DNA of 64,000 bases from Rebecca billardiae RCC1528 (lineage: Eukaryota; Protista; Haptophyta), in contig OZ251235.1 of NCBI GenBank assembly GCA_965240325.2, forward strand, positions 1,116,001-1,180,000, read 5' to 3'. The translations under genes were made by a program, and so were the position numbers. Position 1 is the stretch's first letter, and every line of letters begins with the position of its first letter. Under the pieces are notes generated by a model. It saw only the letters and a program-made list of their open reading frames with translations. It searched no databases and had not been told where the DNA came from. Positions 20,112 through 60,699 of this stretch are shown here, in pieces.

Positions 20112-20142
<31 letters not shown>

Positions 20143-21912
20143 GCCGCCGGGCGCGCCGTCAGCGCCCGGGCTGGCGCTCGAATCGGCGGCGCCATCGGAG
20201 CCGGTCGGATGCAGCCCAGCGGCGGCGGAGGCGGCGCGCTCGCCCTCCGCCTCCGTCACGGCTGCCACCGCCGACGCCACCGCGGCGGCAGCGGCTGGCG
20301 CGGGCGGCGCGGGCGCGGCACTCTGCGCTGCTCGCTCCTCGACGGCGGCGGCACGAGGTGCGGCGGGCTCGCTGGGCGGACGCGCCGGCACGGGCGCATC
20401 TGCCGCCTCGTCCTCGTCCCACGACTCAGGGACCGGCCCGACCGCAGCCGGCGCGCTAGCTGCGGAGGCGGCCGGAGCGGGAGCACTCGGCGGCGCGGCA
20501 GAGGCGACTGTCGCCTCCACGCTCTCGCCCTGACCACGTGCCGCCTCCGCGCTGCCGCCCTGCGCAGACGCCGCGGGCTGGCCACTGGGCGGCACCGGCG
20601 CCGCCGCCGGTGCCCTGGGCGCGCTGACAACGGCCGATGGCTCGCACGCGCTCGCGCTCGCGCCTGAAGGCTCCTCGGCTTCGAAGAGCCCCGGCACAGC
20701 CACCGCGTCCTCCTCCTCCTCCGCCGCCTCCTCCTCCTCCGCCGCCGCCTTCGCCCCCTTTGCCTGCGCAGCAGCCGGCATGGCGGAGGTGGCACTCACA
20801 GCTGTCACCACAGCTGATGGCTGCAGTGCGGCCGGCGGGCCCGCCCCGCCGGTGGCGGTGCTGGGCGGCGCGGCGGCCGCCGCCTGCTGCTCGCGGCGGC
20901 GCGCGCGCAGCCGGCTCGCCGCGCCGCCGCCCGACTTCTCCGCCGCCTTGAGCAGGTGCCCGTACTTTTGAGGGTCGACCGCTGCCAGCGCCTGAGACAC
21001 CTCCTCCGGCAGATCGTCCGCGCCGCCGCGCCCGCCGCGCGCCGAGAGGCCGCGCGCGCCCTTGCCGGCCTTCTTGGCGCGCTTCTTGCGCTCGTCCTGG
21101 AAGCCGAACAGGAGCGGCCTGAGCTGCGCCACGTGCTCGCGCAGCTTGCGCAGCTCGCGAGGGTCCGCACGCGTGCGCTCGGCACCGTCGTCGTCGCGGT
21201 CGCCGTCGCCGCCGCCCGCCGCGGCCGCGTCGGCCGCCTCCAGCGCCCGCAGCTCGCGGATCTTGCGCAGCAGCACGTTGGCCACGTCGAGCTCGCCGAG
21301 CTCCGACAGGTCAATGATCCCGAGCTCGTCCGTCAGCTCCTCCGACTCCTGATCCAGGTCCTCCAGCTTGCGCGCGCGCTCGCGCAGCCAGCGCGCCGCC
21401 TCTTGCTGCTCCGCCTCCGCCTTCTCGCGACGCTCCTCCTCCGTGATGGTGCGCACGTCGGCGAGCGCGATGGGCGGCGCGTCGGCGCGCGCGCCCTGCG
21501 GCGCCTCGCCCGACTCGGCGGGCGGCGCCTGCTCGGCGCGCTTCACAAGCTCGACGCGCGGCCGGTTCGAGGTCGGCTTGGCGCTGGTCGTTGCGTCCTC
21601 GGCGGTGCGCACGCGGCCGAGGCCCTTGCCGCGGAGCGAGTTGGGGAGCGAGTGCTCGTCGAGGTAGAGGCAGCACCAGTCCATCGCGTCGGACAGCGTG
21701 GGCGGCGAGGGCAGCTCGGACAGGCAGCGCTCGATGTCCGGCACGGCCATCCCCTCGCGCAGCAGCGCCTCGTACAGCTGGCGCAGCTTACCCACGTGCT
21801 TCGCGCCGCCGCCCGCCGACGCGCCCGGCGCGGGCTGCGGCGCATCACTCGCGAGCTGCTGGACCGTCGCAACGAGCAGCTTCTCCTGCTCGGAGGACAG
21901 CTTCAGGCTCAT
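15857..21912 (-). CDS. DExH-box RNA helicase, DHX29/DHX57-like
   Basis: GATGSGKTTQVPQ, TQPRRIAAISVAERVA, DEVHER, MSAT, TNIAETSITVDD, QRCGRAGR, HA2 (LTPLGHHLAGLPVDVRLGKM), OB_NTP_bind (IHPASSN...LVYHDKVRT). The N-terminal DWCCLYL and the dsRBD-like PKSLLHEW match this group. Introns at 17860-18069 and 17114-17346. Confidence 0.9.
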
Positions 21913-35612: not shown

Positions 35613-37160
35613 TCATCGGGCAGCGTGTCCGTTCGCAGCACTGGTGGATGCTACGCCCGCTGGGCCTGCATCGGCCCGGCCTGCCGCTGCCCGCCGCTCG
35701 GCGGCGCCCGCCCCGTCCGCCGGCGGCGCGTGGCACCGCTTGTAGATCTGGACGTACGACTCGGAGACGGAGATGAGCTGCGGGTGCACCTGCCCCACGT
35801 GCAGGTCCTGCATCTCGTACCACGCGCCATTGGCGGGGAAGTGCACGTGCGCCTTGTACGCGCCGCCCTCGGGCTTGCCGTCGTGCTGCACGGAGCAGAT
35901 GAGGTCGAACTTGAGCGGCGGCGGCTCCGCGGTCGCGCCCTTGGGCGCCTCGCAGAACGGCGCGAGGTCGAGGTTCTTGATCGGGCAGTTGACAATCGTG
36001 TGGTTCTTCTCGACCAACTGCTGCGTGTTCTTCGTGAAGCGCTTGACGTGGATGATCAGGTAGGCGGGCATGCGCAGCACGCGGAACTGGCGCCGGTCGC
36101 CGTTGATCAGGTCCTGGAACGTCTCGCCGTCGAACTTGGCCATGCACTGCGTCAGCGGCACCTGCGGGATGATGTTGCGGTCGAGCGCGTCGCGGAAGAG
36201 CGGCATCGGCGGCACGTCGATCGTGAGGTAGAGGAAGGGGGTGCGCTGCTCCTCGACGCGCCACCGCTCCGAGCCGGCGTCGGCGGCGTCGGCGTCGGCG
36301 TCGTCGGCGGCGGCGGCCGCCGCCGCGGCGGTGCCCTCCTTCTCGTCCGCCGCGCTCGCCGTCGCCTTGCGCTTCTTGATCCGCGCGTGGTGGCGCACCA
36401 GCACCTCGCCTTGGAAGACGCGGTGCACGATGGACGAGCCGGGGCGGCCGCTGCCGCCCAGGTCGAGGTGGAGGCGGTGGAGGAGCCACGCGAGGAACTC
36501 GTGCGCGTCGGACTGCTTGCCGATCGCGAACCGCTTGCCCGACGCCTGCGCCACCGCCTGCATCAGCTCGTGCGGCGACACCTGCCCCTTGAAGTTGTGC
36601 GGAGACCACATCTTGCGCGTCAGCAGCCCAAACTGGTGCACGAGCGCGGACTCGACGTGCGCGTAGTTGCGCTCGAGCAGGAAGAAGTCGCGCAGCGGCG
36701 GGATGCGCACGAGGCACTGCACCACCGCGTTCACAAAGTCCGTGCCCCGGATGTTGTTCAGCCCAATCGCGCCCGGCAGGTAGTCCCCGCCGTCGATGCC
36801 GCGCGCAAAGCTGATGTCCGTGTCGAGGCGTGCAATCATCGCCTCGTCAAAGCGCGGGTGGAGCATGTCCTGGATGTCGCGCAGAGAGGCGTCGACCACC
36901 TCGTACCCGTCGGGCAGGCAGAAGATCAGCCCCGTGTGCAGGTTCATCACCACGTGGTGGTCCTCCTGCAGCGAGTGCATGTACGCGGGCGTCGAGCGGC
37001 CGCGCCCCTGGAAGTACCGCCCGCACACGAGGCAGGCGTACACGTTGAAGTTGTTGCCCGTGACGGAGCAGCTCTTCTCAAAGTCAAAGTCGAGGACGGT
37101 GCGGTTCACCGTGTCCAGGTACGGGCAGAGGATGGCGCTCGGCTCCTCCTCGGTCTTCAT
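35613..37160 (-). CDS. USP39: U4/U6.U5 tri-snRNP-associated protein 2 (USP39/Sad1)
   Basis: CPYLDTVNRTVLDFDFEKSCSVT..N.NVYACLVCGRYFQGRG, YLPGAIGLNNI, NFKGQVSPHELMQAV, EKNHTIVN, WYEMQDLHV, SESYVQIY. Confidence 0.95.
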   Translation of the reverse strand: MKTEEEPSAILCPYLDTVNRTVLDFDFEKSCSVTGNNFNVYACLVCGRYFQGRGRSTPAYMHSLQEDHHVVMNLHTGLIFCLPDGYEVVDASLRDIQDMLHPRFDEAMIARLDTDISFARGIDGGDYLPGAIGLNNIRGTDFVNAVVQCLVRIPPLRDFFLLERNYAHVESALVHQFGLLTRKMWSPHNFKGQVSPHELMQAVAQASGKRFAIGKQSDAHEFLAWLLHRLHLDLGGSGRPGSSIVHRVFQGEVLVRHHARIKKRKATASAADEKEGTAAAAAAAADDADADAADAGSERWRVEEQRTPFLYLTIDVPPMPLFRDALDRNIIPQVPLTQCMAKFDGETFQDLINGDRRQFRVLRMPAYLIIHVKRFTKNTQQLVEKNHTIVNCPIKNLDLAPFCEAPKGATAEPPPLKFDLICSVQHDGKPEGGAYKAHVHFPANGAWYEMQDLHVGQVHPQLISVSESYVQIYKRCHAPPADGAGAAERRAAAGRADAGPAGVASTSAANGHAAR

Positions 37161-43918: not shown

Positions 43919-46900
43919 TCACGGCTCGGCGCGGCCCGCGTCAGCCGCGCCCGGCCGCGACCCGAGCTCGGCCGCGGACGCCGCACGGGCACCCTGCCCC
44001 TGGCCGCTGCGCTCGAGCGCGCTCAGCTCGGCGGCGAGGCCCGTGATGGCGACGCGCGCGCTCGCGTCGGCGCGCGAGCGCGCCGTGCCCGCCAGCTCGG
44101 TCGCGATGAGCGCGCCGAGCTCGTCGGCGTCGAGGAGCGCGTCGTCGTCGTCGCCCTCCAGCGCCGCGCCGGCCTCGCCGGCGCCGAGGCCAAGGCCGAG
44201 CGCGCCGCCCGCGTCCACGCGCGCCTCCGCGGCGCGCGCGGCGTCTCGCGCCCGCACCGCGTCCGCGTGCGCGCGCACGAGGCGCACAAGGTCGTCCCCA
44301 TAGCGCTCGAGCCGCTTGGGCCCGATGCCACGCACCGCGCCGAGCGCCTCAATGCTCCGCGGCGCCGCAGTCGCTATGCGCTGCATCGTGCGCTCGCACA
44401 GCACGGCGAAGGGCCGCCTGGCCTCGCGCCGCGCGGCCGCGTCGCGGAAGGCGCGCACCGCGTCGTACAGCTCGCGCTCGGCGCCGTCGAGGGCGCCGCC
44501 GGGCGGCGCGCGCGGCGGCGACCCGGTTGTGCGTAGGATCTGGAGCAACTCGTCGCGTTCGCTCGCCGCGCCCGCCGCGCCCGCCGCCTGCCGAGGCGTG
44601 ACGCCGTGCTGCGCGTTGTAGCGCAGCTGCGCCGCGCGCCGCGCGGCGGTCTCGGCCATCGCCTGCTCCATCGCGGCGGAGCGCACGCCGCCCGCCGAGT
44701 AGAAGATCGCGTGGCCGTTGACGTGCCGCGCCGCGCGGCCGATGATCTGCACGAGCGAGGTCGCGGAGCGCAGGAAGCCCGACTTCTCCGCGTCCACGAC
44801 AGCCACGAGCGACACGTGCGGCAGGTCGAGGCCCTCGCGCAGCAAGTTGCACCCGACCACCGCGTCGGCGTCGCCCGCGCGCAGCCGCTCGAGGACGACG
44901 AGCCGCTCGCCCGACGGTACGTCCGCGTGGAGCCACTCGGCGCGCACGCCGTGCGCGCGCAGGAAGCGAGTGAGGGCCTCGGCCGAGCGCTTGGTCAGGG
45001 TCGTGACGAGCGCGCGCTCGCCGCGCGCCTGCCGCGCGGACAGCTGTGCGAGCAGGTGGTCCTCGCACCCGCCCTCCGCCGCCGAGTCCACCACCGAGAC
45101 CGTCGGGTCGGGGATGCCAGTCGGTCGGATCCGCAGCTCGGCGGCGATGGGCAGCGGCGGCGGGAGCGGCGGCGCCGAGGAAGGGCTCGGCTGCGCTGCA
45201 CCCTCGTCCGCCGGCTCGGCCGCTGCGTCCGGCGGCGCGGCGCGCTCGCACATGCGCACCTCCGCCCCCGGCGTGGCGGAGACGAGCACCGCCTGCGGCA
45301 CGCGCGCCCAGAACTCGTCGGCGGTGAGCGGCCGGTTGTCCGCAGCGGAGGGCAGCCTGAACCCGTGCTCGATGAGCGACGCCTTGCGCCGCCGGTCTCC
45401 CTCGAACATGGCGCCGAGCTGCGCGACCGTGAGGTGAGACTCATCGACGAGCAGCAGCCAATCATCTGCCGGCATGTAATCGAGCAGCGTGCGCGGCGGC
45501 TCGCCCGGCCCGCGCCGGGCGTCGAGGTGGCGCGAGTAGTTCTCAATGCCGCGCACGCGCTTCCCGGCGCGCAGCGCGGCGAGGTCCTCGCGCACACGGA
45601 ACAGCAGCCGCTCTGCCTGCGCAAACCGCCCCTCCGCCGCCAGCTGCGCCACACGCGCCTCGAGCTCAGATTCAATCTCGGCGAGCACGCGCGGGAGATC
45701 GTCATCTCGCGCGCTCACGTGGTGGCTCGCCGGGTAGAGCACGGCCTCGGGCAGCGTGGCGGGTGCCGTGGCGCCGCCATCCTCCGCGTCGGCCTGCCTG
45801 CCGCCGTCGCCCTCGCGCGCGCCGCCGCCGCCGCCCGCGCGCCGCGCGACGGCACTCCCCGGTGCGCCGCCGCCGCCGCCGCCACCGCCGCTGCCGCCGC
45901 CGCCACCGCCGCCACCGCCGCCGCTCGCGCGGATCGCATCGACGCGCCACGCGCGCGCCGTGCGCACGAGCTCGACGCGCAGCAGGTGCTGCGTGCGCTC
46001 GCTCGAGAAGGCGGGCGCCACCTCGATCACCGCGCGCTCGGCCCCTCCCGCCGGGGCCGCCCCGGTGCCGCCGCCTCCGGCGCCGAGCCCGTCCGCGGCC
46101 GCGGCGCGCTCACTACCGCAGCCGTCGCGCGCGGGCCGGAGGACGCGGAACTGCGCGCGCGAGAGGCGGCCGGTGGGCGAGGCGTGCTGCTCGTACTCGA
46201 GTGCGTGCAGCCGCTCGAGCAGCTCGTCTGGCGAGCCCCACCGCTGCCCTCTCGCCAGCAGCACCGCGCGCTCCAGGTACCGCTCCGGAACGCCCAACCC
46301 GAAGATGCATGAGACGGTCGCAACGACGATCGTGTCGCGCCGCTCGAAGAGCGCGCAGGTCGCCTCGTGCCGCAGCGCGTCGACGTTCTCGTTGACGCGC
46401 GAGAGCTTTTCACGGTACGTGTCCGACACGGCGGAGAAGCTCTCCGGCCGGTAGTAGTCGAAGTTGGAGACGAAGTAGGTCACCGCGTTCTCCGGGAAGA
46501 AGGCTCGAAGCTCGGCGTACAGCTGCGCCGCCAGAACCTTGTTGGGTGCGAGCACGAGCGTGGGGCGGCCGAGCCCGGCGATCACGTTGGCCATGACGTA
46601 CGTCTTGCCCGTGCCCGTCGCGCCCTTCATCGAGACGCGCGGCGCGCCCGCGCGCAGCTCGCGCAGCAGCGCGCCGATCGCCTCTGGTTGGTCCCCAGAG
46701 GGTGAGTAGGCTGAGCGCAGCTTGAAGCCGCGCCGGGAGGTGAGCGCGCTCAGCGGCTGTGTTGCCGCGGCCGCGGCGGCGCGCGCGCGCGCGGAGGGGT
46801 CGTCGGGGTGGGCGAGGGGTCCGAACAGCGCCTCCGCCGCGTGCGCGCCGCCCTCCTCGTCCTCCTCGAGCACGTCGTCGATGTCGTCGATGTCCGTCTC

Positions 46901-48487
46901 GTTGGTGTGCAGCTCGTCCGCGCGGCGCGCCGACGCGGCCGACGGCGCCGCGCCCGCGCCGCTCGCCGAGCCGAGCGCGGCGATGCGCGCGCGCTCGGCC
47001 GGATGCCATGCGGCGAGCGCGGCCTCGAGCTGCGCGACGCCCGAGTCGGCGTCGTGGCCGACCACGGCGCACAGCGCGCGCGCGAGCCGCGCGACCACGC
47101 CGTCGCCCTGCTCGGCCGCGCCGCCGCGCGGCCGCTCAAGCTCGCTTTCGAGCGCGCTCACGCGCGGGCCGCGCCTCTGCTCCCACCAGCGCCGCGCGCG
47201 CGCCTCAGCCATCCACGCGGCGACGGCCCGGCCGGAGCGGCGCGAGGACGCGGCGACGGCCGCGACGGCCGACTCGTGACCTCCGTATCCCGTGTGCGCG
47301 CCGCCGAGCAGCTCCGGCAGCTGCGCGAGCGCGGGCGCCGCCTCGCGCCTGTGCGCCGCGAGCGCGGCGGCGACCGCGGCGGCGTCGTCGCGGCCGAGGT
47401 GCTCGGGCGCGGCGGCGCGGAGCTCGTCCGCGGAGGCGCGGCAGAGGGCGGTGGCGGTGCCGAACGCCTCGCGCAGCGCGCGCTGCCCGCGCACGCCTAG
47501 CCCCAGCCCGTCAAGCACTGACGTGAACTCTGCGTGGTGACGAAGCGCGCGGTGGTGCAGCAGCGCGGTCGCGTGCGCCTCGTCGCGCAGGCGGCGCATC
47601 GTGAGGAGCGCGGGCGAGTCGAGGGGCAGCGCGAGCGGCTCGGCGCGGCCGGGGACGAACAGGAGCTCCTCCTGCTTCGCGAGCGCGGCGAGCGAGACCT
47701 CGGGCCCGCCGAGCGCCTCGAGCGCGCGCTGCGCCGCGCCGAGCTGCGGCCGCCCGCCGTCGACGAGAAGCAACGAGGGGGCCTCTGCGCGCGCCGCGGC
47801 GCCGAGCCGGGCGAGGAGGGCCTCGTGGATGGCGGCGGGGTCGTTGGCCGGGCCGGCGTGCTCGATCTCGACGCAGCCGTACGCCGAGAGCGCGGGCGCG
47901 CCGTGCGCGAGCACCGAGAACGCCCCGACCGTGTGTCGGCCGTGCAAGTGGGAGATGTCTACGCACTCGACGCGCGCGAGCGACGCGCGGCCGCGCGCGC
48001 AGCCGAGGGCCGAGGCGAGCGTGTCGAGGCCGCCCGCGGCGTGCGCGGCGCGCGAGAGCCCCTCGCTCAGCGCGGCGAGGTGCTCGACGCACGCGCCCGA
48101 AGCGTCCGCCGCCGCGAGCGCGTGCAGAGCGTCGCGCGCCGCGCGCTCGTCGCCCGCACTGAGCGCGTGCGCGAGCGCGTCCGCGAGCGCCATTCGGCTA
48201 GGCGCAGCTCGGAGCTCGCCGCGCTCGCTCTCCTGCAGCGCAAGCCCGAGCACCACGCTGGCCAGCCGCACGTCCGATGCGACGGGCTGGCCAAACCACG
48301 CGCACAGCGCAAGCTCCTCCGCCGCGCGCGTGACGCCGCGCCAGTGCCGGCAGACCTCGTGCGCGCGCACGGGCGGCGGCGGCGAGGAGGCCCACGTGGC
48401 GAGGCCGCGCGCACGCGAGGCCGGCGCCGCGTGCCGCGTGGCGAGCGCGAGCGCCGCCAGCACCATGGGCGACAGGGCGGAGGACAT
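43919..48487 (-). CDS. UvrC(RNase H+HhH)-UvrB-HRDC fusion protein with an N-terminal targeting-like peptide
   Basis: UvrC: RVECVDISHLHG, NDPAAI, LLLVDGGRPQL, LAKQEE, LRDEAH, HhH. UvrB: PSGDQPEAI, GATGTGKT, APNKVLAAQLY, DYYRPE, GIENYSRHL, DESH, SATPG, NLLREGLDLP, SLVQIIGRAAR. HRDC: ELYDAVRAFR...GIGPKRLERYG. One uninterrupted 1522-aa ORF. Confidence 0.92.
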   Translation of the reverse strand: MSSALSPMVLAALALATRHAAPASRARGLATWASSPPPPVRAHEVCRHWRGVTRAAEELALCAWFGQPVASDVRLASVVLGLALQESERGELRAAPSRMALADALAHALSAGDERAARDALHALAAADASGACVEHLAALSEGLSRAAHAAGGLDTLASALGCARGRASLARVECVDISHLHGRHTVGAFSVLAHGAPALSAYGCVEIEHAGPANDPAAIHEALLARLGAAARAEAPSLLLVDGGRPQLGAAQRALEALGGPEVSLAALAKQEELLFVPGRAEPLALPLDSPALLTMRRLRDEAHATALLHHRALRHHAEFTSVLDGLGLGVRGQRALREAFGTATALCRASADELRAAAPEHLGRDDAAAVAAALAAHRREAAPALAQLPELLGGAHTGYGGHESAVAAVAASSRRSGRAVAAWMAEARARRWWEQRRGPRVSALESELERPRGGAAEQGDGVVARLARALCAVVGHDADSGVAQLEAALAAWHPAERARIAALGSASGAGAAPSAASARRADELHTNETDIDDIDDVLEEDEEGGAHAAEALFGPLAHPDDPSARARAAAAAATQPLSALTSRRGFKLRSAYSPSGDQPEAIGALLRELRAGAPRVSMKGATGTGKTYVMANVIAGLGRPTLVLAPNKVLAAQLYAELRAFFPENAVTYFVSNFDYYRPESFSAVSDTYREKLSRVNENVDALRHEATCALFERRDTIVVATVSCIFGLGVPERYLERAVLLARGQRWGSPDELLERLHALEYEQHASPTGRLSRAQFRVLRPARDGCGSERAAAADGLGAGGGGTGAAPAGGAERAVIEVAPAFSSERTQHLLRVELVRTARAWRVDAIRASGGGGGGGGGGSGGGGGGGGAPGSAVARRAGGGGGAREGDGGRQADAEDGGATAPATLPEAVLYPASHHVSARDDDLPRVLAEIESELEARVAQLAAEGRFAQAERLLFRVREDLAALRAGKRVRGIENYSRHLDARRGPGEPPRTLLDYMPADDWLLLVDESHLTVAQLGAMFEGDRRRKASLIEHGFRLPSAADNRPLTADEFWARVPQAVLVSATPGAEVRMCERAAPPDAAAEPADEGAAQPSPSSAPPLPPPLPIAAELRIRPTGIPDPTVSVVDSAAEGGCEDHLLAQLSARQARGERALVTTLTKRSAEALTRFLRAHGVRAEWLHADVPSGERLVVLERLRAGDADAVVGCNLLREGLDLPHVSLVAVVDAEKSGFLRSATSLVQIIGRAARHVNGHAIFYSAGGVRSAAMEQAMAETAARRAAQLRYNAQHGVTPRQAAGAAGAASERDELLQILRTTGSPPRAPPGGALDGAERELYDAVRAFRDAAARREARRPFAVLCERTMQRIATAAPRSIEALGAVRGIGPKRLERYGDDLVRLVRAHADAVRARDAARAAEARVDAGGALGLGLGAGEAGAALEGDDDDALLDADELGALIATELAGTARSRADASARVAITGLAAELSALERSGQGQGARAASAAELGSRPGAADAGRAEP

Positions 48488-48766
48488 CCTAGCTCGCCGG
48501 GTCGTGGACCGCGCGCGCGCGGTCTCACCGGAGTGCGTCTTGCGCCCTGCGCCCGCCCGTGCGCGCGCGCAGGCTGTGCGTCCGGTTGCGCCGGACTTTG
48601 CCCTTTTGGGCTCCCGGACCGATATCTGGGTCGATTACGGTGGTCCGGGAGCTGCTCAGCATTTGAAGCAGCCTTGCCTCCGCGGGGGGCGCAACTCCGC
48701 TGTGCGGCGTCCCTCTCCGCTTCCTCCGCGCGTGCACGCGCCCTCCGCCAAGGCGCGCGCGCGCCG

Positions 48767-51700
48767 ATGTGGGCCGAGCCGAGCCTGGTGTGGTTCTCGC
48801 TGGAGCACTGCGTGTCCAAGGTGGACGACGATGACGCCGAGCCGCTCCGCGCCGCGCTGTACACGCCGATGGAGCTCGTGCTGCACGACGAGCAGACGGG
48901 CGTGTACCACCTGCGCTCGGACGAGCACAAGGAGTTCCGCGTGCGCGAGGCGCCGACGGCGAGCGCCGACGCGCTGCGCGGGGTGGACGACCTGCTCTTC
49001 CTCTCCGACTTCTCCGAGCCCTCGCTGCTGCACACCCTCCGCGTGCGCTACGGCCGCGACGAGGTGTACACGTTTGTCGGCTCGATCCTGATGTCGATCA
49101 ACCCGTACCGCTGGATCGACGGGCTGTACTCGACGGCGACGATGATGCGGTACCTCGAGGCGCCGCTCGGCTCGCAGGCGCCCCACCTCTACGCCATCGC
49201 CGACGCGGCGTACCGCGCCGCCATCGCCTCGGCCGCGCCGGGCGCCGCGGGCGGCGCGCCGCCGCGCCCATGCAACCAAGCCATCATCATCTCGGGCGAG
49301 TCCGGCGCGGGCAAGACGGAGGCGACGAAGATCATCCTACAGTACCTCGCGCAGGTGACCTCGCTCGACCGCACCGCGCTCGAGGCCGCCACCTCGCCCG
49401 CGCGCCTCGCGTGCACCGTCGCGTCGGGCGGCTCGCCCGCGGTCGCGCCTGGCCCGCCGTCGCCGCTCGCGACTGTAGCCCCGGGCGAAGGCGCGGACGG
49501 CGGCGCGGGCGCCGAGCCGCTGAGCCCGCCGTGCCTCGTGTTCACCGGCGCGTCGGGGCTGGGCTGGCTCGAGCAGCGCGTGCTCGACGCCAACCCGCTG
49601 CTCGAGGCGCTCGGCAACGCGCGCACGCTGCGCAACCACAATTCGTCGCGCTTTGGCAAATGGATCCAGCTCGAGCTGAACGGCGCCGGCAGGATCTGCG
49701 GCGCGCAGATCACCAACTACCTGCTGGAGAAGACGCGCGTGGCGCGGCAGGCGGCGGGCGAGGCGAACTACCACGTGTTCTACCAGCTGCTCAACGGCGC
49801 CGCCGCGGGCGACGACGCCGCCGCCGCCGCGCTCGAGCTCGGGCGTGACGGGCCGCCGGCAGATAGTCGCTTCTTTGGCTATCTGCAACACGGCGACGGC
49901 GCGCACATGGCGACGCGCACGCCGATGGCGACGGCGGCGCAGCTCGCGGTGACGCGGCGCTGCCTGAGCTCGCTCGGGTTCTCGGCCGAGGACGAGGCGA
50001 CGCTCTTCCGCCTGCTCGCCGCCGTGCTCCACCTCGGCGACGTCACCTTTGAGGCGCTGGAGAACGAGGGCGATGGCTGCCAGGTGTGCGGCGCGGGCGG
50101 CGCCGCGCGGCGCGCGCTCGCGGCCGCCGCCGCCGCGCTGCGCGTCGAGCAGGGCGAGGTGGAGACGGCGCTGCTCTCGTCGGCGCGCGTGGTGGGCGGC
50201 GAGACGATCGAGCGGCGCGCCAGCGTCGCGCAGGCCGAGGACCGCCGCGACGCGCTCGCCAAGGCGCTGTACGCCCAGCTGTTTGTCCTCGTGCTGCAGC
50301 GCCTGAATGCAGGCGTGGCCGCGGCAGCGTCAGAGCAGCAGCAGCAGGCGCAGCAGCAGCAGCAGGCGGCGCAGCAGCAGGCGGCGGCGGGCGGCGCGGC
50401 GGAGGGCGCGCGCACCAAGGAGATCAAGGAGAACGCGTACAACGCGGCGAACGGCGTGCACGCCGCCGCGCCCACCACGGGCGCGCGCGGCGGCGCCGCG
50501 CCCGCCGCGCCCGCCGCGCCCGCCGCGCCCGCCGCGCCCGGAGGCGCGGCGCGCGCGCCCGGCTGGATCGGTATCCTCGACATCTACGGCTTCGAGTGCA
50601 TGCCGACGAACTCGTTCGAGCAGCTGCTGATCAACTACGCGAACGAGACGCTGCAGCGCAACTTCAACACGCACATCTTCGAGGCGGAGCAGTCCGAGTA
50701 TGAGCGCGAGCGCATTCAGTGGTCGCACATCCGGTGGGCGGATAACTCTGCGTGCGTCGCGCTGATCGACGGGCGGCCCAAGGACGTGCCCGGCGTGCTC
50801 GCGACGTTCGAGGACGGGTGGAGCGCGAGCTCGGCCGCGTCCGCCGCCGCGGGCGGCGGCGCGGGCGGGAGCACCGCCGCGCGCGTCGTCGCCGCCGCCG
50901 CCGCGCGCGCCGCCGCCGCCGCCGAAGCCACGGCCGAGGGCGGCGCCGCCGCCGGCGCCGCCGCCGGCTGCGCCGCCGACCGCAAGCTGCTGGCTCAGCT
51001 GCATGCGCAGTTCGGCCGCGGCGCGCACGCGCACTACGTGCTGCCCAAGTACGACGCGGACTCGACCTTCGTGCTCAAGCACTACGCCGGCGAGGTGCGC
51101 GCCGCGCCGCTCGCGCCGCTCGCGCCGCCGCGCCGTCACGCGCCGCGGCGGCGACGCCGCCCGGGCGCTGCGTTGGTGCGGGTGTTGGCTTTTGACGCGC
51201 GCGCCCGCCCGCCCGCCCGCCTGCCCGCGCGCTCGCCCGCCGCCGCGGGCGCAGGTGACGTACACGGTGGACGGCTTCAGCGCGCGGAACAACGAGAACC
51301 TCTCGGAGGAGCTGCGCGCGCTGATGCGCGCCTCCGCGTGCGCGGTGGTCCGCGGGCTGTTCGGTGGCGGCGCCGCCGACGGCGCGGACGCGCCGGTGCT
51401 GTCGCGCAAGCCCTCGGGGCGGCGCTCCTCTCGGCTGCGCGAGCAGTCGGTGGGCGCGCAGTTCAAGGAGCAGCTCGCGGCGCTGAGCAAGCTGATCGAC
51501 GCGTCGTCCACCCACTTCGTCCGCTGCCTGTGCGCTAACGCCCAGCGCGCGCCCCACGCCTTCGACGCGGGCGCGTGCGCCACTCAGCTGCAGTACGCCG
51601 GTATGCTGGAGACAGTGCGCATCCGCGCGGCAGGGTACCCGCTGCGGCTGTATAAGGACGTGTTCGCGAAGCGGTACGCGCTGCTCGGGCGCACGCTGGG

Positions 51701-54700
51701 CGCGCGCGGCGGCGCGGCCGGGCCGGCCGCGGCGCAGCACCAAGCGCACGCGCACAAGAGGGGCAAGCCCGCACGGCCCAAGCACCGAGGCGGCGGCGGT
51801 GGCGGCGGCGGCGGCGCGCGGCCGGGCGGCGGTGCGGCCGCGGCGGGCGCGGCCGACGCCGCAGACGCGCTCGTGGCGACGCTGCGCTCCGCGCTGCACC
51901 TCGACGAGCTCGACGTGCAGGCGGGGCTGACGAAGGTGTTTCTGCGCCACCGCGCGGCGCGCGCGCTCGAGAAGCTCGCCGCCCTGCGCTCGCGCGCCGC
52001 CGCCTCCCAGCTGCAGCGCGCGCGGCGCGCGCAGCTCGCCGCGCGCGAGGCCGCGGCCGCGGCCGCGCGGCTGCAGGCTGCGGCGCGCGGCGTGGCGGCG
52101 CGCCGCGCGCTCTGCGCCGCGCGTTGCGCGGCGCGGCTGCTGCAGGCACGCGCGCGCGGCGTGGGCGCGCGCGCGCGCGCCGCAGCCGCGCGCGAGCTCC
52201 GCGCGCGCCACGCCGGCGCCGCTCTTTCGATACAGCGCTGCGCGCGCGGCGCGGCCGCGCGCCGCGCCGCGGCCGCGCGCCGCGCCGAGCGCGCCGAGGC
52301 GGCGGCGGCGGACGTGGCGCTGCCAATGTCGCCGGTGATCGTGGCGGGCGGCGGCGGGCCGCGCGCGGGGTTGCCGGCCGAGACGGCCGCCGCCCCGCCG
52401 CCGGGCGGCAGCGCGCCCGCCTCGCCCTCCAAGACGGTCGCGCGCCTCCGGCCCGGCCGAGCGCTCACGTTGCCGGAGCGCTCGACGGTGCTGGACGCCG
52501 CGCGCGCGATGGCCGCGCGGCGCTGCGACGCGGCGCTGCTCGTCTCGTCGACGGGCGCCCTGCTCGGGATCCTCACCGACACGGACGTGAGCCGGCGCGT
52601 CGCCGCCGCCTCCGTCGACGCGGCCTCCGTGCGCGCGTGCGACGTGATGACGCGCGGCCCCAAAACCGTTACGCCCGAGCACGCCGCAACCGACGCGCTG
52701 GCCACGATGATCGAGCACCAGTTTCGGCACCTGCCCGTCGTCGAGGCGGGTGGCGGCGTGTCGGGCGTGCTCGACCTGACGCGCTGCCTGTACGACGCGA
52801 TCTCGAAGCTCGAGAAGGCGCAGGACTCGAGCGGCGCACTCTCCACCGTCGCCGCCGACCTGCGCGCGCGCGCCGCGGCTTCGGGAAAGGTCTCGGCCGC
52901 CGCGCTCGAGGCGCTCATCGCTCGCGCGGCCAAGCCGTTCACGCCCACGCTCGCGCACGTGCTGGGCAAGGCGGGGGGCGGCGGCGCGGCGGGGTGCGCG
53001 GTGCGCGCGAACGCGAACGTGACCGAGGCCGCGCGCCTCATGTCCGGCCGCCGCCGCGCCGTCGTCGTCCTCGACGAGGAGAAGGTTCTCGGCATCCTGA
53101 CGTCCAAGGACGTGCTCACGCGCGTGGTGGCGGCCGGGCTCTCGGCGGATACGACCAACGTGACGAGCGCGATGACGCCGTCGCCCGACTGCGCGTCGGC
53201 GGGCTCGACGATCCTCGAGGCGCTGCACCTGATGCACGACCACCGCTACCAACACATGCCCGTGCTCGGCGCGCGCGGCGAGCTGCTCGGCGTCGTCGAC
53301 GCGCTGCAGCTTGCGTACCACGCGCTCGGCGGCGCGCAGGGCGAGGCCTTCTGGGCGTGTGCGCTCGAGGACGAGCCAACCGGCGTGGGCGGTGGTGGTG
53401 GCGGAGGCGGCGGTGGGGCGGGGAGCAGCCACGCCGGCGGGAGCGGCGGCGCCGGTGGCTCGGCGGCGGGCGCCAGCTACGTGAGCACCGCCGCCGAGCC
53501 CGCGCCGCCGCCGCAGCTCACTCCTCTCTGCCCCGCCGTGCCGGACGACGACGTGGACTCGGCGCGCACCGTCGCGCGGCTGCGGCCGAGCAAGGCGCTC
53601 ACGCTGCCCGAGGGCTCGAGCGTGCTCGACGCGGCGCGCGCGATGGCGGCGCGCCGCTGCGACGCCGCGCTCCTTGTCTCCCCCGACGGCGCCCTCCTCG
53701 GCATCCTCACGGACACAGACGTGAGTCGGCGCGTCGCGGCAGCGTCGATTGCCGCGGCGGGCGCGCGCGCGGCCGACATGATGACGCGCGAGCCCAAGAC
53801 CGTGACGCCCGAGCACTCGGCGATGGGCGCGCTGCGGCTGATGGTGCGGCACCACTTCCGCCACCTCCCCGTGCTCGACGCCGCCGGCGCCGTCTCGGGC
53901 GTCCTCGACCTCACCCGCTGCCTCTACGACGCGATCACGAAGCTCGAGCGCGGCTTGGACTCCGGTGCGGCGCTCGGCGCGGTCGTCGGCGACCTGCGCG
54001 CGAGCGCGGCCGGCTCGGCGGCCGACGCGGCGCTCGAAGGGCTGCTGGCGCAGGCGAGGCAGATGTTCTCGCCCACGCTCGCGCAGGTGCTCCGCGCCGC
54101 CGCAGACCCGATCGCCGCCGTCAGCGTCAGGCCGAACGCGAACGTGACGGAGGCTGCGCGCCTCATGTCCGGCCGCCGGCGCGCAGTCGCTGTCCTTTCT
54201 GACGAGGACAAGGTGCTCGGCATCCTGACGTCGAAGGACGTGCTGACGCGCGTGGTGGCGGCCGGGCTCTCGTCGGACACGACCAACGTGACGAGCGCGA
54301 TGACCCCCTCGCCCGACTGCGCCTCCGCCGACGCCACCATCCTCGAGGCGCTGCACCTGATGCACGACCATCGCTACCAACACATGCCGGTGCTGGGCGC
54401 GCGCGGGCGGCTGCTCGGCGTCGTCGACGCGCTGCAGCTGGCGTACCACGTGCTGGGCGACGGCTCGGCGGCGGGCGGCGGCGGGGACGCGTTCTGGCAG
54501 GCCTCGCTCGCGATCGGCGCCGAGGGCGCGCCGCGCGCGCGCTCCGACGGCACGAGCGGCACCGCACTCGACACGGAGGGCGCGGGCTCGCACATAGCGC
54601 ACACCGCCGCCGAGCACGCCGCGCCGAGCGTCGACGGCGCCGCGTCGTGGCAGATGCACTCCGCCGTGGCCGACGGCGTGGACGGCGAGACGGAGGTGGG

Positions 54701-55550
54701 CGACGACGCGGTGCCCAGGTCCCGCCAGCCCAGCATCGCGCCCAACGACTCGGTCTCCGGCGTGGGCGCGCGCCGGCGCATCGGCGCCGAGTCGATGGAC
54801 TCTCCACGCTCGCCGATGACGCGCGCCGCTTCCGAGAAGTTTCTCTTCAAGGTCGAGTTCAAGGGGGAGAAGCACCGCGTGATCCTCACGCAGTTCTCGC
54901 TGCGCGCGCTCGTCGGCGCGTCGGAGGAGGCGCTCAAGCTCACGCCCGCCGAGAGCGAGCGGCTGCGGTGCGCGCGCGCGCCGCGCGCCGCGCGCGAGCG
55001 CGCGGCGGCCACGCGCCGCGCCGCCGGACGGCCGCCCGCGCCGCGGCCACGGTTGCGCGCGCGCGCCTCACGCGCCCGCGCCATCGCGGCGCGACCGCTT
55101 GCTCGGCCGCAGGTTCAGCTACACCGACACGGACGGCGACACCGTCGCGCTCTCCACCGACGGCGGCGTGCAGGACGCGGTCGAGCTCGCGCGCGCGGCT
55201 GGCTGGTGCGCGCGCGCGCGCGCTCGCGCACGAGCCCCGGCCTCCGACCCGCCCACCCGCGCGCGGCTGACGCGCACTCACGACGCGGGAGCGCACCCCG
55301 CGCGCCGCGCCGTCTCGCCACCGCCTCGCGCCTCAGGAGCCACATCGCCGTGTGGGCCACGCTCACGCCGAACGGCAGCTGGATGCCCAACATCGAGCTG
55401 ACGAACGAGGCGCCCTCCAGCGCCGTCGTCCTCAACCACGACGCGAACGCGGTCGCCAAGGCCGCGCAGACCAAGGTGCTGGGCGGGATGGGCGCCGTCA
55501 TGGCACTCGCCGTTGTCGGCTCGTTCGCACTGCGGCTCTTCGAGAGATGA
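48767..55550 (+). CDS. Myosin with IQ motifs, 8 CBS domains, PB1 and a C-terminal TM (class XXIX-like architecture)
   Basis: GESGAGKT, NHNSSRFGK, LDIYGFE, NSFEQLLINYANE, GLTKVFLR; IQ-like LQAAARG, IQRCARG; two 4xCBS blocks; PB1 FLFKVEF...YTDTDGD; TM at end. Introns at 51095-51254, 54968-55112, 55206-55336. Confidence 0.9.
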
Positions 55551-59082: not shown

Positions 59083-60636
59083 TCATCGATCCGAGGCCAA
59101 CTCCTCCTCGAAGCGGCGCGCCTGCGCGGAGAGTGCTAGCGGGCGCGGGCCACGCGACGCGGGCGCTTGAGCGCCGCCCTCCGGCCCGGCGTCGGCGCCG
59201 CTTGCAGCCGCACGCGCGCGGAGCATGGCCTCATGCCGCCGCCCGCGCGCGTCCTCAGAAGTTGCACCGAGCAGGGCGGCGGCGGCGGCGCTGCTGCCCG
59301 CGATGGCGGTGTCATCGCGGGCGCCGACGCCACGCTCGCCTGCCCCGCGCACACGACGCAGCTCGTGCAGTGGCCCGATCCCGCCCGGGGCGCCGCCCCG
59401 ACCCCGGCGCCGCGTGGCGTCCAGCTGCGCCGGGCACAGCCGGCGCGCGCACCACTCCAAGAAGCCCGCAACGCCTGCGCCTGTGCGCGCCGAGCACGGG
59501 AGGACGATGGGCGGGGCGGCGCGCACGGCGGAGCCTGCAGCGTCGGCCGGCCGCGCGCGCAGCAGCGCCTCCACCTCCTGCGGCGGGATCGCGCCTCGCA
59601 GGTCGCACTTGTTGGCGAGCACGACAAGCGGCAGCGGCGCCGCGGCCGGGACGGTTGCCTCAGCTGGGCCGACCGCCGGCGGCGCCGCCGGTGCTTGGGC
59701 CGGGCGCCGCGCGCACAGCTCGGCGACGCGCGCGTGCTCGCGCGCCGCGAGCTCGCGGCGCGCGCCGTCGGCCTCGCTCGCGTCCACCACGAACGCCACC
59801 AGCGCCACCTTCCCATCGGCCACGAACCGATCCCAGTACGCGCGCAGCGCGGCCGCGCCGCCCACGTCCATCAGCTCAAGCGAGATCGACGCGAGATCGC
59901 GATCTCCCGCGAGCGAGGGGAGCCAGCTGTGCGGTGGCGCGTCGGCGCGGCCGACGGCGGAGATGTTCGCGCCGGCGGTGCGCTCGGGCGGGGCCGCGCC
60001 CGCGGGCTCGGGCGCGCCCCCGCGCATCGCGCTCGCGCAGAGGCTCGACTTGCCGCTGCCGTCGAGGCCGAGCACGAGGACGCGGCGCGTGGCCGGCGGC
60101 GGCCGCGTCGCGGCGCTGAGGAGGGCGAGCTTGTGCCGCATGGCGCGCAGCTCGGCCTGTTGAGCCGAGACGGCGCTCGCCAAGCGCGCCGTCTCGCGCT
60201 CGCTCGCCTCCTCCACCAGCTGGCGCGCGCCGTCGTCTGCAAGGGCGGCCGCAAGCTGAAGGGGAAGGCGGCCGCTGCGGTCGCGCTGGAGCGCGCTCGC
60301 GCCGTGCGCGAGGAGGCGGCCGATGACGGCGTGCGCGCGGCTCGATTGGAGCGCGAGGTGTAGTGGCGTGTCGCCCGCCTCGTTCGCCGCGTTGGGATCG
60401 GCACCGTGCTGCAGGAGGAAGGCGACCGCGCCATCCTCGCCGTGGTGCGCGGCGTGGTGCAGCGCGGTCGCGCCGTGCGTGTCCACGGCGTGCACGAGCG
60501 AGGGACGCTGACCGCACAGAGAGATGAGCTCGGTCAGCTCGCCCCGCGCGGCGCACGCGAAGAGGCGCAGCTCGCGCGCGCCCACCGACGAATCGTCCCG
60601 CCCGGCGGGGCGCGCCGTCGCGGGGCGGGGCGGCAT
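59083..60636 (-). CDS. Ankyrin repeat-coiled coil-ARF/ARL small GTPase fusion
   Basis: ANK: GATALHHAA, GDTPLHLAL, GRLPLQLAA. G1 VLVLGLDGSGKSS, G2 TAG, G3 DVGGA..LRAYW, FVVDAS, G4 LANKCD, G5 CSARTG. 3' end may be spliced differently. Confidence 0.85.
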   Translation of the reverse strand: MPPRPATARPAGRDDSSVGARELRLFACAARGELTELISLCGQRPSLVHAVDTHGATALHHAAHHGEDGAVAFLLQHGADPNAANEAGDTPLHLALQSSRAHAVIGRLLAHGASALQRDRSGRLPLQLAAALADDGARQLVEEASERETARLASAVSAQQAELRAMRHKLALLSAATRPPPATRRVLVLGLDGSGKSSLCASAMRGGAPEPAGAAPPERTAGANISAVGRADAPPHSWLPSLAGDRDLASISLELMDVGGAAALRAYWDRFVADGKVALVAFVVDASEADGARRELAAREHARVAELCARRPAQAPAAPPAVGPAEATVPAAAPLPLVVLANKCDLRGAIPPQEVEALLRARPADAAGSAVRAAPPIVLPCSARTGAGVAGFLEWCARRLCPAQLDATRRRGRGGAPGGIGPLHELRRVRGAGERGVGARDDTAIAGSSAAAAALLGATSEDARGRRHEAMLRARAAASGADAGPEGGAQAPASRGPRPLALSAQARRFEEELASDR

Positions 60637-60699
60637 AGACGACGGTTGGTCGAAGGTCACTTGGCGTCAGCGCAATCTGCCAATCTGACCACTGTCGCT

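What the first reader, a model, noticed from the sequence alone, without database searches (positions are those of the whole stretch)
43919..48487. Single-chain UvrC-UvrB-HRDC: a possible organellar, UvrA-independent excision-repair machine in an alga
Seen: one intronless ORF carries the UvrC 5'-incision RNase H domain with its DDH-type residues intact (DISH, VDGG, DEAH; ~47975-47580) plus HhH. It continues into all UvrB helicase motifs (~46727-44610) and ends in an HRDC domain (~44480-44260) where UvrB normally has its UVR coiled coil. No GIY-YIG domain is present. The beta-hairpin keeps DYY but reads SNFDYYRPES instead of SYYDYYQPEA. The region matching UvrB domain 2 (the UvrA-docking domain) is diverged and filled with Gly/Ala runs. 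The N-terminus (MVLAALALATRHAAPASRARGLATW) resembles a targeting peptide. Known: bacterial NER uses separate UvrA, UvrB and UvrC; eukaryotic nuclei use XP proteins; organelles are generally thought to lack NER. Inference: fusion removes the need for UVR-UVR recruitment, HRDC may substitute for UvrA loading, and the enzyme may make only the 5' cut on plastid or mitochondrial DNA.
Basis: partly seen in the sequence, partly recalled or inferred. Interest (0 to 1): 0.9.

Follow-up and report, generated by a model that had tools for sequence, protein, structure and literature searches.

The report
Fused UvrC-UvrB-HRDC repair gene, haptophyte
A nuclear gene of a haptophyte alga fuses the 5'-cutting half of bacterial UvrC to a UvrB helicase and an HRDC domain. 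It appears to have lost the surfaces that bind UvrA, so it may be a one-protein, organelle-directed form of bacterial excision repair, which organelles are thought to lack.

Summary
Window 43919-48487 (-) is one 1522-aa ORF. In order it carries an N-terminal extension, a new helical domain, the UvrC RNase H 5'-endonuclease, HhH, a new linker domain, a full UvrB and a RecQ-type HRDC. There is no GIY-YIG and no UVR domain. Codon bias runs the whole length.

The same architecture ("type A") occurs in Diacronema, Prymnesium, Aureococcus and Cymbomonas. In Diacronema one exon spans the junction and an intron lies inside the UvrB part, so this is a real nuclear gene, not a chimera.

Nuclease and ATPase residues are invariant. 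The UvrB domain-2 residues that contact UvrA are invariant in 55 bacteria but vary in the algal proteins.

Diatoms and other uncultured eukaryotes carry the opposite-order fusion, UvrB then full UvrC ("type B"). Many diatom copies have plastid-type presequences, and the UvrC half is cyanobacterial by best hits. The two algal UvrB groups sit together, next to cyanobacteria, with moderate support.

Best reading: an organelle-directed (probably plastid), UvrA-independent UvrBC-type enzyme that nicks 5' of lesions or at DNA junctions. Localisation, absence of UvrA and single incision are inferred, not shown. I found no published characterisation. It is a new variant of a known kind.

The parts
43919..48487 (-). 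Whole ORF, 1522 aa plus stop: a single-chain UvrC(C-half)-UvrB-HRDC protein ('type A' fusion)
   Evidence: GC3 is 0.82-1.00 against GC2 of 0.42-0.85 along the whole frame.
48368..48487 (-). N-terminal extension, residues 1-40: a hydrophobic core (MVLAALALA) followed by an Arg/Ser/Ala/Pro-rich stretch with no acidic residue before E44. Putative targeting peptide.
   Evidence: Kyte-Doolittle 10-residue maximum is 2.4 at residue 8 and the first Asp/Glu is at 44. pLDDT is 49-59. Similar extensions occur in Diacronema and P0308.
47993..48364 (-). Type-A-specific N-domain, residues 42-165, mostly helical, with no known family
   Evidence: pLDDT is 85-95. It is conserved across type A. There is no Pfam hit. 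hhalign matches bacterial UvrC or type B only over the last ~20 residues.
47525..47980 (-). UvrC RNase H-like 5'-endonuclease domain, residues 170-321, with D177, D216, D243, H305, K271 and R301/D302
   Evidence: Pfam E 1e-27. PDB 2nrt by sequence, E 4e-21. Foldseek 2nrr TM 0.86, rmsd 2.2. Residues are invariant in type A rows with a residue at that column, in 36 bacterial UvrC (K271 35/36) and in 5 type B.
47306..47521 (-). (HhH)2-like region, residues 323-394. The hairpin motifs are degenerate (GLGV; HLGRD).
   Evidence: It aligns to the HhH part of the UvrC C-half. pLDDT is 92-98. Pfam HhH is not detected here but is detected in relative P0005.
46958..47275 (-). Type-A-specific helical linker domain, residues 405-510, with the signature SAVxAL..SRRxG..W..EARARRWWxxRR at 405-440
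   Evidence: The motif is conserved in haptophytes, Aureococcus, Cymbomonas and metagenome members. pLDDT is 79-93. No Pfam or hhalign match.
46730..46957 (-). Low-complexity acidic/Ala-rich spacer, residues 511-586, predicted to be mostly disordered
   Evidence: pLDDT is 36-71. It is not conserved.
44585..46726 (-). UvrB core, residues 588-1301, domains 1a, 2, 1b and 3. Walker A is GATGTGKT, Walker B is DESH, and the motif VI arginines are present.
   Evidence: NCBIfam E 2e-191. PDB 1d9z 517 bits. Foldseek 6o8e TM 0.93, rmsd 2.7. Motif residues are conserved.
46415..46474 (-). Beta-hairpin region, residues 672-691. Y95 and Y96 equivalents are kept. Y92 is N, Y93 is F, Q97 is R and Y101 is F (B. 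caldotenax numbering).
   Evidence: These positions are invariant or near-invariant in 55 bacteria (Y93 53/55) and altered in type A and, differently, in type B.
45734..46264 (-). UvrB domain 2, residues 742-918. The beta strands are kept. Two disordered Gly/Ala inserts lie at 790-809 and 860-904. UvrA-contact positions are R183Q, R196L, G197R and D198A.
   Evidence: for the fold and inserts. for the residue table. Pfam UvrB_inter is absent.
44231..44485 (-). HRDC domain, residues 1335-1419, RecQ type, in the position of the bacterial UVR domain 4
   Evidence: Pfam E 6e-14. The best PDB matches are RecQ HRDC domains 2ma1, 1wud and 2rhf. pLDDT is 93-98.
43922..44230 (-). Ala/Gly/Asp-rich C-terminal tail, residues 1420-1522. 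It is not conserved outside pavlovophytes.
   Evidence: GC3 of 0.97-0.98 shows that it is coding.
48488..48767 (.). About 280 bp of intergenic DNA shared with a divergently transcribed myosin gene. Presumed bidirectional promoter.

Best explanation
This is a nuclear gene for an organelle-directed enzyme, most likely plastid-directed. The UvrB part may be of cyanobacterial ancestry; the origin of the UvrC half is unresolved. The ATP-driven UvrB damage-verification helicase is covalently tethered to the RNase H-like 5'-endonuclease of UvrC.

Proposed mechanism:
1. The covalent link and a new helical linker domain replace the lost UVR-UVR docking.
2. The protein loads on DNA without UvrA. It probably enters at bubbles, forks or nicks, helped by the HhH and RecQ-type HRDC DNA-binding modules.
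3. It translocates until the beta-hairpin stalls.
4. The DDH nuclease then nicks the strand on the 5' side.
5. Removal of the damaged stretch would need strand-displacement synthesis or a separate 3' nuclease.

Shown here: the architecture, the fold, the intact catalytic residues, conservation across algal lineages, and decay of the UvrA-contact residues.

Inferred: localisation, UvrA-independent loading, the substrate, and single 5' incision.
For: - Architecture and folds are established.
- The gene is real and fused. The junction and linker are conserved at protein level with Diacronema. Diacronema exon 1 spans UvrC, linker and the UvrB N-terminus, and a 118-bp intron lies inside UvrB. Prymnesium has at least two introns. 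Codon bias is uniform. The flanks are nuclear: myosin, UCH and a DHX29-like helicase.
- Nuclease residues D177, D216, D243 and H305 are invariant in the rows aligned there. ATPase residues K45, D338/E339, R506, R540 and R543 are conserved apart from the incomplete Cymbomonas model.
- UvrA-contact residues are invariant in 55 bacteria (R183, R194, G197 and R213 are each 55/55). In type A they read R183 2/7, R194 3/7, R196 1/7 and G197 0/7, and type B shows the same decay.
- Both UVR domains are absent.
- E. coli UvrBC finds lesions without UvrA but incises only pre-nicked or bubble substrates (PMC5814901).
- Plastid link: diatom type B proteins carry a signal peptide plus an AxAF motif. All named bacterial best hits of the type B UvrC N-half are cyanobacteria. 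The algal UvrBs form one group next to cyanobacteria, SH-aLRT 94.8. Both types share H at the F/Y249 position.
- The N-terminal extension has a signal-peptide-like core followed by an acid-free stretch.
Against: - No localisation predictor or experiment was available, and the presequence could equally be mitochondrial (RGL|A resembles an R-3 site). Prymnesium, Aureococcus and Cymbomonas models show little or no N-terminal extension.
- The genome could not be searched, so UvrA, Cho or another GIY-YIG nuclease may exist elsewhere.
- In this window's own protein R194, R213 and E215 are retained, and the domain-2 fold is intact.
- The cyanobacterial position of UvrB is not significant. An algal-plus-proteobacterial clade is not rejected (p-AU 0.095), and no alphaproteobacteria were sampled.
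- The origin of the type A UvrC half is unresolved.
- In bacteria the 5' cut normally follows the 3' cut.
- The hairpin changes (Y92N, Y93F) and F249H may mean that the substrate is no longer a bulky lesion.
Confidence: 0.5

Rival explanations
1. It is a component of a canonical three-part system. The alga also encodes an organelle-targeted UvrA and a separate GIY-YIG (Cho-like) 3' nuclease, and the fusion merely replaces UvrB plus the 5' half of UvrC.
For: The domain-2 fold is retained, and this protein keeps R194, R213 and E215. Bacterial 5' incision normally depends on a prior 3' cut (established UvrC biochemistry; PMC5814901). The genome outside the window could not be searched.
Against: UvrA-contact residues that are invariant in 55 bacteria vary freely across type A and type B. 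Two disordered inserts sit in domain 2. No haptophyte-labelled stand-alone UvrC N-half appeared among the 120 listed hits of the search with the diatom N-half. There is no UvrC N-half in the window.
Confidence: 0.2
2. It is no longer a lesion-excision enzyme. Instead it is a structure-specific helicase-nuclease that processes forks, R-loops, D-loops or recombination intermediates of organelle DNA, a fixed version of the UvrBC activity on pre-opened or pre-nicked DNA, with HRDC giving junction binding.
For: The hairpin residues at positions Y92/Y93 and the pocket residue F/Y249 are replaced; from memory, these restrain binding to undamaged DNA and form the flipped-base pocket. The protein has gained a RecQ-type HRDC. 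GIY-YIG is lost. UvrBC cuts only pre-opened or pre-nicked DNA.
Against: Y95, Y96, E99 and the rest of the hairpin base are conserved. The sister type B keeps a complete UvrC with GIY-YIG, which argues for true dual-incision repair in that lineage.
Confidence: 0.2
3. The same enzyme is mitochondrial or dual-targeted rather than plastidial.
For: The pavlovophyte presequences contain a conserved ARxLAT segment that resembles a mitochondrial R-3 cleavage site and lack the Phe motif.
Against: The N-terminus has a signal-peptide-like hydrophobic core, KD 2.4-2.9. The sister type B has ASAFAP-type plastid signals. The affinity is cyanobacterial, not proteobacterial, although only weakly supported. 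All named hosts are plastid-bearing.
Confidence: 0.15
4. It is an artefact: an assembly chimera, two adjacent genes read through by chance in GC-rich DNA, bacterial contamination, or a pseudogene.
For: Long accidental ORFs are common at 77% GC.
Against: The same order of domains and a conserved linker are found in at least four algal lineages. One Diacronema exon spans the junction, and orthologues have spliceosomal introns. Codon bias is uniform. Catalytic residues are invariant. Neighbouring genes are eukaryotic.
Confidence: 0.02

Closest known systems
Bacterial UvrB-UvrC pre-incision/incision complex (UvrBC)
   Same: It has the UvrB SF2 helicase with a beta-hairpin, and the UvrC RNase H-like DDH 5' nuclease with HhH. 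All catalytic residues are kept. UvrBC can find lesions without UvrA (PMC5814901).
   Different: Here the two parts form one polypeptide in the order nuclease then helicase. Both UVR docking domains, the GIY-YIG 3' nuclease and the conserved UvrA-contact residues are missing. Two new domains and an HRDC have been added. It is encoded in a eukaryotic nucleus.
Diatom-type UvrB-UvrC fusion ('type B': Nitzschia, Seminavis, Pseudo-nitzschia and uncultured eukaryotes)
   Same: It is an algal, nuclear-encoded covalent UvrB+UvrC. Its UvrB groups with type A on one side of a 100* branch. It shares His at position F/Y249, lacks Pfam UvrB_inter and UVR, and shows the same decay of UvrA-contact residues.
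   Different: The domain order is the opposite: UvrB, then GIY-YIG, the UvrC_RNaseH-like middle domain (PF22920) and the RNase H endonuclease. It keeps the 3' nuclease, has no HRDC, lacks the type A N-domain and RRWW linker, and has different hairpin substitutions.
Cho (UvrC homologue with only the GIY-YIG half)
   Same: It is a natural split of the two UvrC nuclease activities into separate proteins.
   Different: Cho keeps the 3'-cutting half. This protein keeps the 5'-cutting half and is fused to UvrB.
RecQ helicases with a C-terminal HRDC
   Same: An SF2 helicase is followed by an HRDC. This HRDC is most similar to bacterial RecQ HRDC domains.
   Different: The helicase core is UvrB, not RecQ. 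There is no RQC or zinc domain, and a nuclease is attached.
Single-nick alternative excision repair (UVDE type)
   Same: If only the 5' cut is made, repair would start from one nick 5' of the lesion. This is an analogy drawn from established knowledge and was not tested.
   Different: The enzyme family is unrelated (a TIM-barrel nuclease with no helicase).

Membership tests
UvrB (excinuclease ABC subunit B; TIGR00631 / NF003673) | SF2 helicase motifs I-VI with Walker A Lys, DESH and the motif VI arginines | tested here: met
   K45, D338/E339/S340/H341, R506, R540 and R543 equivalents are present in the window. Across type A they read K45 7/7 and the rest 6/7, the exception being the incomplete Cymbomonas model.
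UvrB (excinuclease ABC subunit B; TIGR00631 / NF003673) | Overall UvrB fold (domains 1a, 1b, 2 and 3) | tested here: met
   AF2 pLDDT 86. Foldseek 6o8e TM 0.93, rmsd 2.7 A.
UvrB (excinuclease ABC subunit B; TIGR00631 / NF003673) | Beta-hairpin with the conserved aromatic set Y92, Y93, Y95, Y96 and Y101 | tested here: inconclusive
   Y95, Y96 and E99 are kept. Y92 is N, Y93 is F, Q97 is R and Y101 is F. All are invariant in 55 bacteria except Y93, which is 53/55.
UvrB (excinuclease ABC subunit B; TIGR00631 / NF003673) | Domain-2 surface that binds UvrA (R183, R194, R196, R213, E215; Pfam UvrB_inter) | tested here: not met
   There is no PF17757 hit. The window has R183Q, R196L, G197R and D198A, and these positions vary across type A and type B.
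UvrB (excinuclease ABC subunit B; TIGR00631 / NF003673) | C-terminal UVR domain (domain 4) that docks UvrC | tested here: not met
   There is no PF02151 hit. An HRDC occupies the C-terminus.
UvrB (excinuclease ABC subunit B; TIGR00631 / NF003673) | Score above NCBIfam's equivalog cut-off | tested here: not met
   637.8 bits against a cut-off of 743, and 628 against 750.
UvrC (excinuclease ABC subunit C; TIGR00194) | N-terminal GIY-YIG 3' nuclease | tested here: not met
   There is no PF01541 hit. A UvrC HMM matches only positions 350-609, and nothing else in the window matches.
UvrC (excinuclease ABC subunit C; TIGR00194) | UVR domain that docks UvrB | tested here: not met
   There is no PF02151 hit.
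UvrC (excinuclease ABC subunit C; TIGR00194) | RNase H-like endonuclease domain with the Asp-Asp-His catalytic site | tested here: met
   PF08459 E 1e-27. D177, D216, D243 and H305 are invariant in the aligned type A rows, in 36 bacterial UvrC and in 5 type B. TM 0.86 to 2nrr.
UvrC (excinuclease ABC subunit C; TIGR00194) | C-terminal (HhH)2 DNA-binding domain | tested here: inconclusive
   The fold is modelled and aligned to 2nrt. The Gly hairpins are degenerate, and Pfam finds no HhH here.
HRDC domain (PF00570) | Pfam score above gathering threshold and a five-helix fold | tested here: met
   52.3 bits against a threshold of 23.8. RecQ HRDC structures are the best PDB matches. Helices have pLDDT 93-98.
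Plastid-targeted protein of a secondary red-type plastid | Bipartite presequence: a signal peptide, then a transit peptide with an aromatic residue at the cleavage site | tested here: inconclusive
   A hydrophobic core and an acid-free stretch are present, but no clear AxA-F motif. No predictor or experiment was available. Diatom type B relatives do have AxAF.
UvrA-independent system | No UvrA encoded in the genome | not testable with these tools
   Only 64 kb of the genome was available, and there was no way to query the algal genomes for UvrA.

The most novel reading that the evidence does not exclude
Several plastid-bearing algal lineages (haptophytes, a pelagophyte, a prasinophyte, diatoms and others) run a UvrA-less, single-polypeptide bacterial-type excision repair on organelle DNA. 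It was built twice from UvrB and UvrC genes that may be cyanobacterial, by fusions in opposite order. The haptophyte version has shed the 3' nuclease and works as an ATP-driven lesion- or junction-directed nickase. This would overturn the view that organelles lack nucleotide excision repair.
Probability: 0.35. Interest if true: 0.8.

Novelty: new variant of a known kind. Interest (0 to 1): 0.66.

Why it matters
Reviews state that nucleotide excision repair seems absent from organelles and that flowering plants have no UvrA, UvrB or UvrC (PMC6981420). Plastid genomes of surface-ocean algae nevertheless sit in strong light and UV.

A conserved, catalytically intact UvrB-UvrC fusion with organelle-type presequences makes organelle excision repair in major marine primary producers directly testable.

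For repair enzymology it is a natural experiment with three parts:
- a covalent UvrBC that has dispensed with UVR docking and, apparently, with UvrA;
- a version that keeps only the 5' nuclease;
- a sister version that keeps both nucleases.

It also yields two conserved domains of unknown fold family.

Tried and rejected
- Literature. Nine full-text searches combining UvrB, UvrC or excinuclease with diatom, haptophyte, plastid or species names found nothing on these fusions. The plastid-proteome paper PMC5462543 has no held supplements and does not mention repair.
- Word-indexed search with the UvrB part alone. It returned almost only Desulfovibrio-like UvrBs at 47-48% identity, probably through composition bias, and said nothing about origin.
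- Names for top bacterial UvrC relatives and for type B clusters. The results were mostly unnamed.
- Tree of the UvrC C-half. It was unresolved. Type A groups with a non-diatom subset of type B (96*), but this may be long-branch attraction.
- AU test. It does not reject an algal-plus-gamma/beta-proteobacterial UvrB clade (p 0.095), so cyanobacterial origin of UvrB is favoured but not proven.
- One large alignment for a full-length model. It misaligned the UvrC fragments and was abandoned in favour of two half-models.
- Pfam at E up to 5 and hhalign gave no family for the N-domain, linker or tail. This also gives no support to the idea that type A arose from type B by duplication and permutation.
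- Metagenome scan with the linker motif.
- Check of the P0308 contig for a poly-A tail, as transcript evidence. It was uninformative.
- No synteny was found with the Diacronema or Prymnesium loci.
Full report
**Observation.** Window 43919-48487 on the minus strand is a single ORF of 1522 codons with an ATG start. The DNA is 77% G+C, so long accidental ORFs abound, but this one is clearly real.
- Pfam finds, in order, the UvrC RNase H endonuclease domain (170-308), ResIII/DEAD (598-668), Helicase_C (1146-1255), the UvrB-specific PF12344 (1271-1300) and HRDC (1338-1404).
- NCBIfam gives UvrB at E 2e-191. UvrC matches only the last 250 positions of its profile.
- There are no hits to GIY-YIG, UVR or UvrB_inter.
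- A six-frame scan with UvrC and UvrB HMMs finds nothing else of the kind, and no UvrC N-half, anywhere in the 64 kb.

**Is it one gene?** Third-position G+C is 0.82-1.00 along the whole frame, including the linker and the tail, and in all but one sliding window second positions are clearly lower. Several lines show that the fusion is real:
- The closest relative is Diacronema lutheri KFE25_001158 (1521 aa, 50-61% identity). It is colinear from the N-terminus to the HRDC, linker included.
- In the Diacronema genome, exon 1 encodes residues 1-688, which cover the UvrC half, the linker and the first hundred residues of UvrB. A 118-bp intron then interrupts the UvrB part.
- The Prymnesium parvum gene has at least two frame-breaking introns in the helicase C-terminal region.
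- The window's other genes are eukaryotic. They include a myosin transcribed divergently from about 280 bp upstream, a UCH/zf-UBP hydrolase, a DHX29-like helicase, ankyrin-Arf, MFS and dehydrogenases.

Contamination, chimera and read-through are therefore excluded for practical purposes.

**Anatomy.** AlphaFold models of residues 1-600 (pLDDT 81, pTM 0.76) and 575-1420 (pLDDT 86, pTM 0.83) give this layout:

| Residues | Feature | Evidence |
|---|---|---|
| 1-40 | Low-confidence N-terminal extension | |
| 42-165 | Confident, mostly helical domain | |
| 170-321 | RNase H nuclease | TM 0.86, rmsd 2.2 A to 2nrr; |
| 323-394 | HhH-like helices | |
| 405-510 | Helical linker domain | |
| 511-586 | Mostly disordered acidic spacer | |
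| 588-1301 | UvrB | TM 0.93 to 6o8e; |
| 1335-1419 | HRDC | |
| 1420-1522 | Low-complexity tail | |

- The best PDB matches of the HRDC are bacterial RecQ HRDC domains.
- The N-domain and the linker domain have no Pfam match. They have no profile-profile match to bacterial UvrC or to the diatom fusion.
- Both are nevertheless conserved in the family. The linker carries the signature SAVxAL..SRRxG..W..EARARRWWxxRR.
- Domain 2 of UvrB keeps its strands but carries two disordered Gly/Ala inserts, at 790-809 and 860-904.

**Family.** An exhaustive profile search of 1.84 billion representative proteins found only about seven clusters that match beyond the UvrC domain into the linker and UvrB.
- Named members of this 'type A' architecture are Diacronema and Prymnesium (haptophytes), Aureococcus (a pelagophyte) and Cymbomonas (a prasinophyte). 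The rest come from metagenomes.
- HRDC is present in the haptophyte and pelagophyte members and absent from one divergent clade, P0005.
- A second architecture, 'type B', runs in the opposite order: UvrB, then a complete UvrC with GIY-YIG. It is found in the diatoms Nitzschia, Seminavis and Pseudo-nitzschia and in many uncultured eukaryotes.
- One type B cluster includes an MMETSP transcript.

**Functional residues.** I aligned 55 bacterial UvrBs, 7 type A and 12 type B sequences, numbered on B. caldotenax via a close Anoxybacillaceae relative.
- ATPase and helicase residues are conserved in all full-length members. The only exceptions are in the incomplete Cymbomonas model.
- The domain-2 residues known from mutagenesis and the UvrA-UvrB structure to contact UvrA behave differently. 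R183, R194, G197 and R213 are 55/55 in bacteria, and R196 is R or K in 52/55. In type A they read R183 2/7, R194 3/7, R196 1/7, G197 0/7 and R213 4/7. Type B shows similar decay.
- The window's own protein has R183Q, R196L, G197R and D198A, but keeps R194, R213 and E215.
- In the hairpin, Y95, Y96 and E99 are kept, while Y92 is N/H/F, Y93 is F and Q97 is R. Type B instead changes D94 and Y95.
- Both types have His where bacteria always have Phe or Tyr (position 249). This shared derived state argues that their grouping in the tree is real.
- In the nuclease domain, D177, D216, D243, H305, K271 and R301/D302 are invariant in type A rows with a residue at that column and in 5 type B. They are also invariant in 36 bacterial UvrC, apart from K271 at 35/36.

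The contrast between frozen catalytic sites and a drifting UvrA surface is the strongest sequence evidence for UvrA independence.

**Origin and destination.**
- In a site-heterogeneous ML tree of 88 UvrB cores, type A (97*) and type B (99*) are each one group. Together they lie on one side of a 100* branch, and cyanobacteria are the adjacent bacterial group. The split of algae plus cyanobacteria against the other 57 bacteria has SH-aLRT 94.8.
- This is not decisive. A tree that forces algae together with gamma/beta-proteobacteria is not rejected (p-AU 0.095), and no alphaproteobacteria were in the sample.
- Independently, a search with the UvrC N-half of a diatom type B protein returned, after type B fragments, only cyanobacterial UvrCs among all named hits.
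- The UvrC C-half tree is unresolved.
- Seven diatom type B proteins begin with a hydrophobic signal followed by AxAF, the ASAFAP-type plastid signal.
- The pavlovophyte type A proteins begin with a hydrophobic core (KD 2.4-2.9). An Arg/Ser/Ala/Pro stretch follows, with no acidic residue for 44-59 residues. This fits a bipartite plastid signal, but there is no clear Phe motif and a mitochondrial reading is possible.
- The Prymnesium, Aureococcus and Cymbomonas models have short or no extensions. This may reflect the gene models.

**Mechanism.** What is known:
- Bacterial UvrB is loaded by UvrA through domain 2.
- UvrB recruits UvrC through paired UVR domains.
- The GIY-YIG half of UvrC cuts 3' of the lesion and the RNase H half cuts 5'.
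- E. coli UvrBC can find lesions without UvrA, but cuts only substrates that already carry a 3' nick or a bubble (PMC5814901).

The protein here has lost both UVR domains and the 3' nuclease, and its family has lost constraint on the UvrA surface. It keeps every catalytic residue and has gained an HRDC and two new domains.

I therefore propose a self-contained, ATP-dependent UvrBC-type enzyme. It enters DNA at open structures, verifies with the hairpin, and nicks 5'. Repair is then completed by displacement synthesis or by another nuclease.

Rivals are:
- a canonical system with UvrA and a Cho-like partner encoded elsewhere;
- a shift to damage-independent processing of forks or R-loops;
- mitochondrial rather than plastid location.

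**Comparison and novelty.** The parts belong to known families (UvrB, the UvrC C-half and HRDC). As whole proteins they fail the UvrB and UvrC equivalog tests on several defining features (see the membership table).
- The architecture exists in public proteomes under generic names.
- I found no paper that describes or tests either fusion.
- A current review states that NER seems absent from organelles (PMC6981420).

I rate it a new variant of a known kind, of solid interest.

Noticed in passing
window 48768-55547 (+): A myosin gene is transcribed divergently from the repair gene. The motor domain is split between two overlapping ORFs (47534-51535 and 51003-55547), which suggests an intron or a frame change near 51.0-51.5 kb. 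It is followed by eight CBS domains, an unusual myosin tail.
   Followed up: no
P0007, P0010, P0013, P0014, P0017, P0022, P0024, P0027, P0241 and others (not in the window): There is a second, opposite-order fusion: UvrB followed by a complete UvrC with GIY-YIG. It occurs in diatoms and uncultured eukaryotes. Many diatom copies have ASAFAP-type plastid presequences, and cyanobacterial UvrC is the best bacterial match.
   Followed up: partly
window 47993-48364 and 46958-47275 (-): Two conserved, confidently modelled domains have no detectable family. They are the N-domain (residues 42-165) and the linker domain, which carries an 'ARRWW' helix (residues 405-510).
   Followed up: partly
window 45734-46264 and about 45143-45235 (-): Low-complexity Gly, Ala and Pro inserts lie at residues 790-809, 860-904 and 1084-1114. 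Diacronema has inserts at the same sites, but with different sequence and length. Without RNA data I could not tell whether any of them is an in-frame intron.
   Followed up: no
L003 6001-9072 (Prymnesium parvum): The annotated Prymnesium protein lacks 89 codons that are open and in frame in the genomic DNA. This is either an in-frame intron call or an over-trimmed gene model.
   Followed up: no
window 10999-15243 (-): One 1415-aa ORF combines a GT4 glycosyltransferase domain with a Gly_transf_sug (DXD) domain.
   Followed up: no
window 17101-21912 (-), 35616-37160 (-), 59086-60660 (-): These are ordinary eukaryotic neighbours: a DHX29-like helicase with a UBA domain, a UCH hydrolase with zf-UBP, and an ankyrin-Arf protein. 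They confirm nuclear DNA.
   Followed up: no
window 44606-46312 (+): A 568-aa antisense ORF lies inside the gene. It has no family match and is most likely a by-product of the high G+C content.
   Followed up: yes
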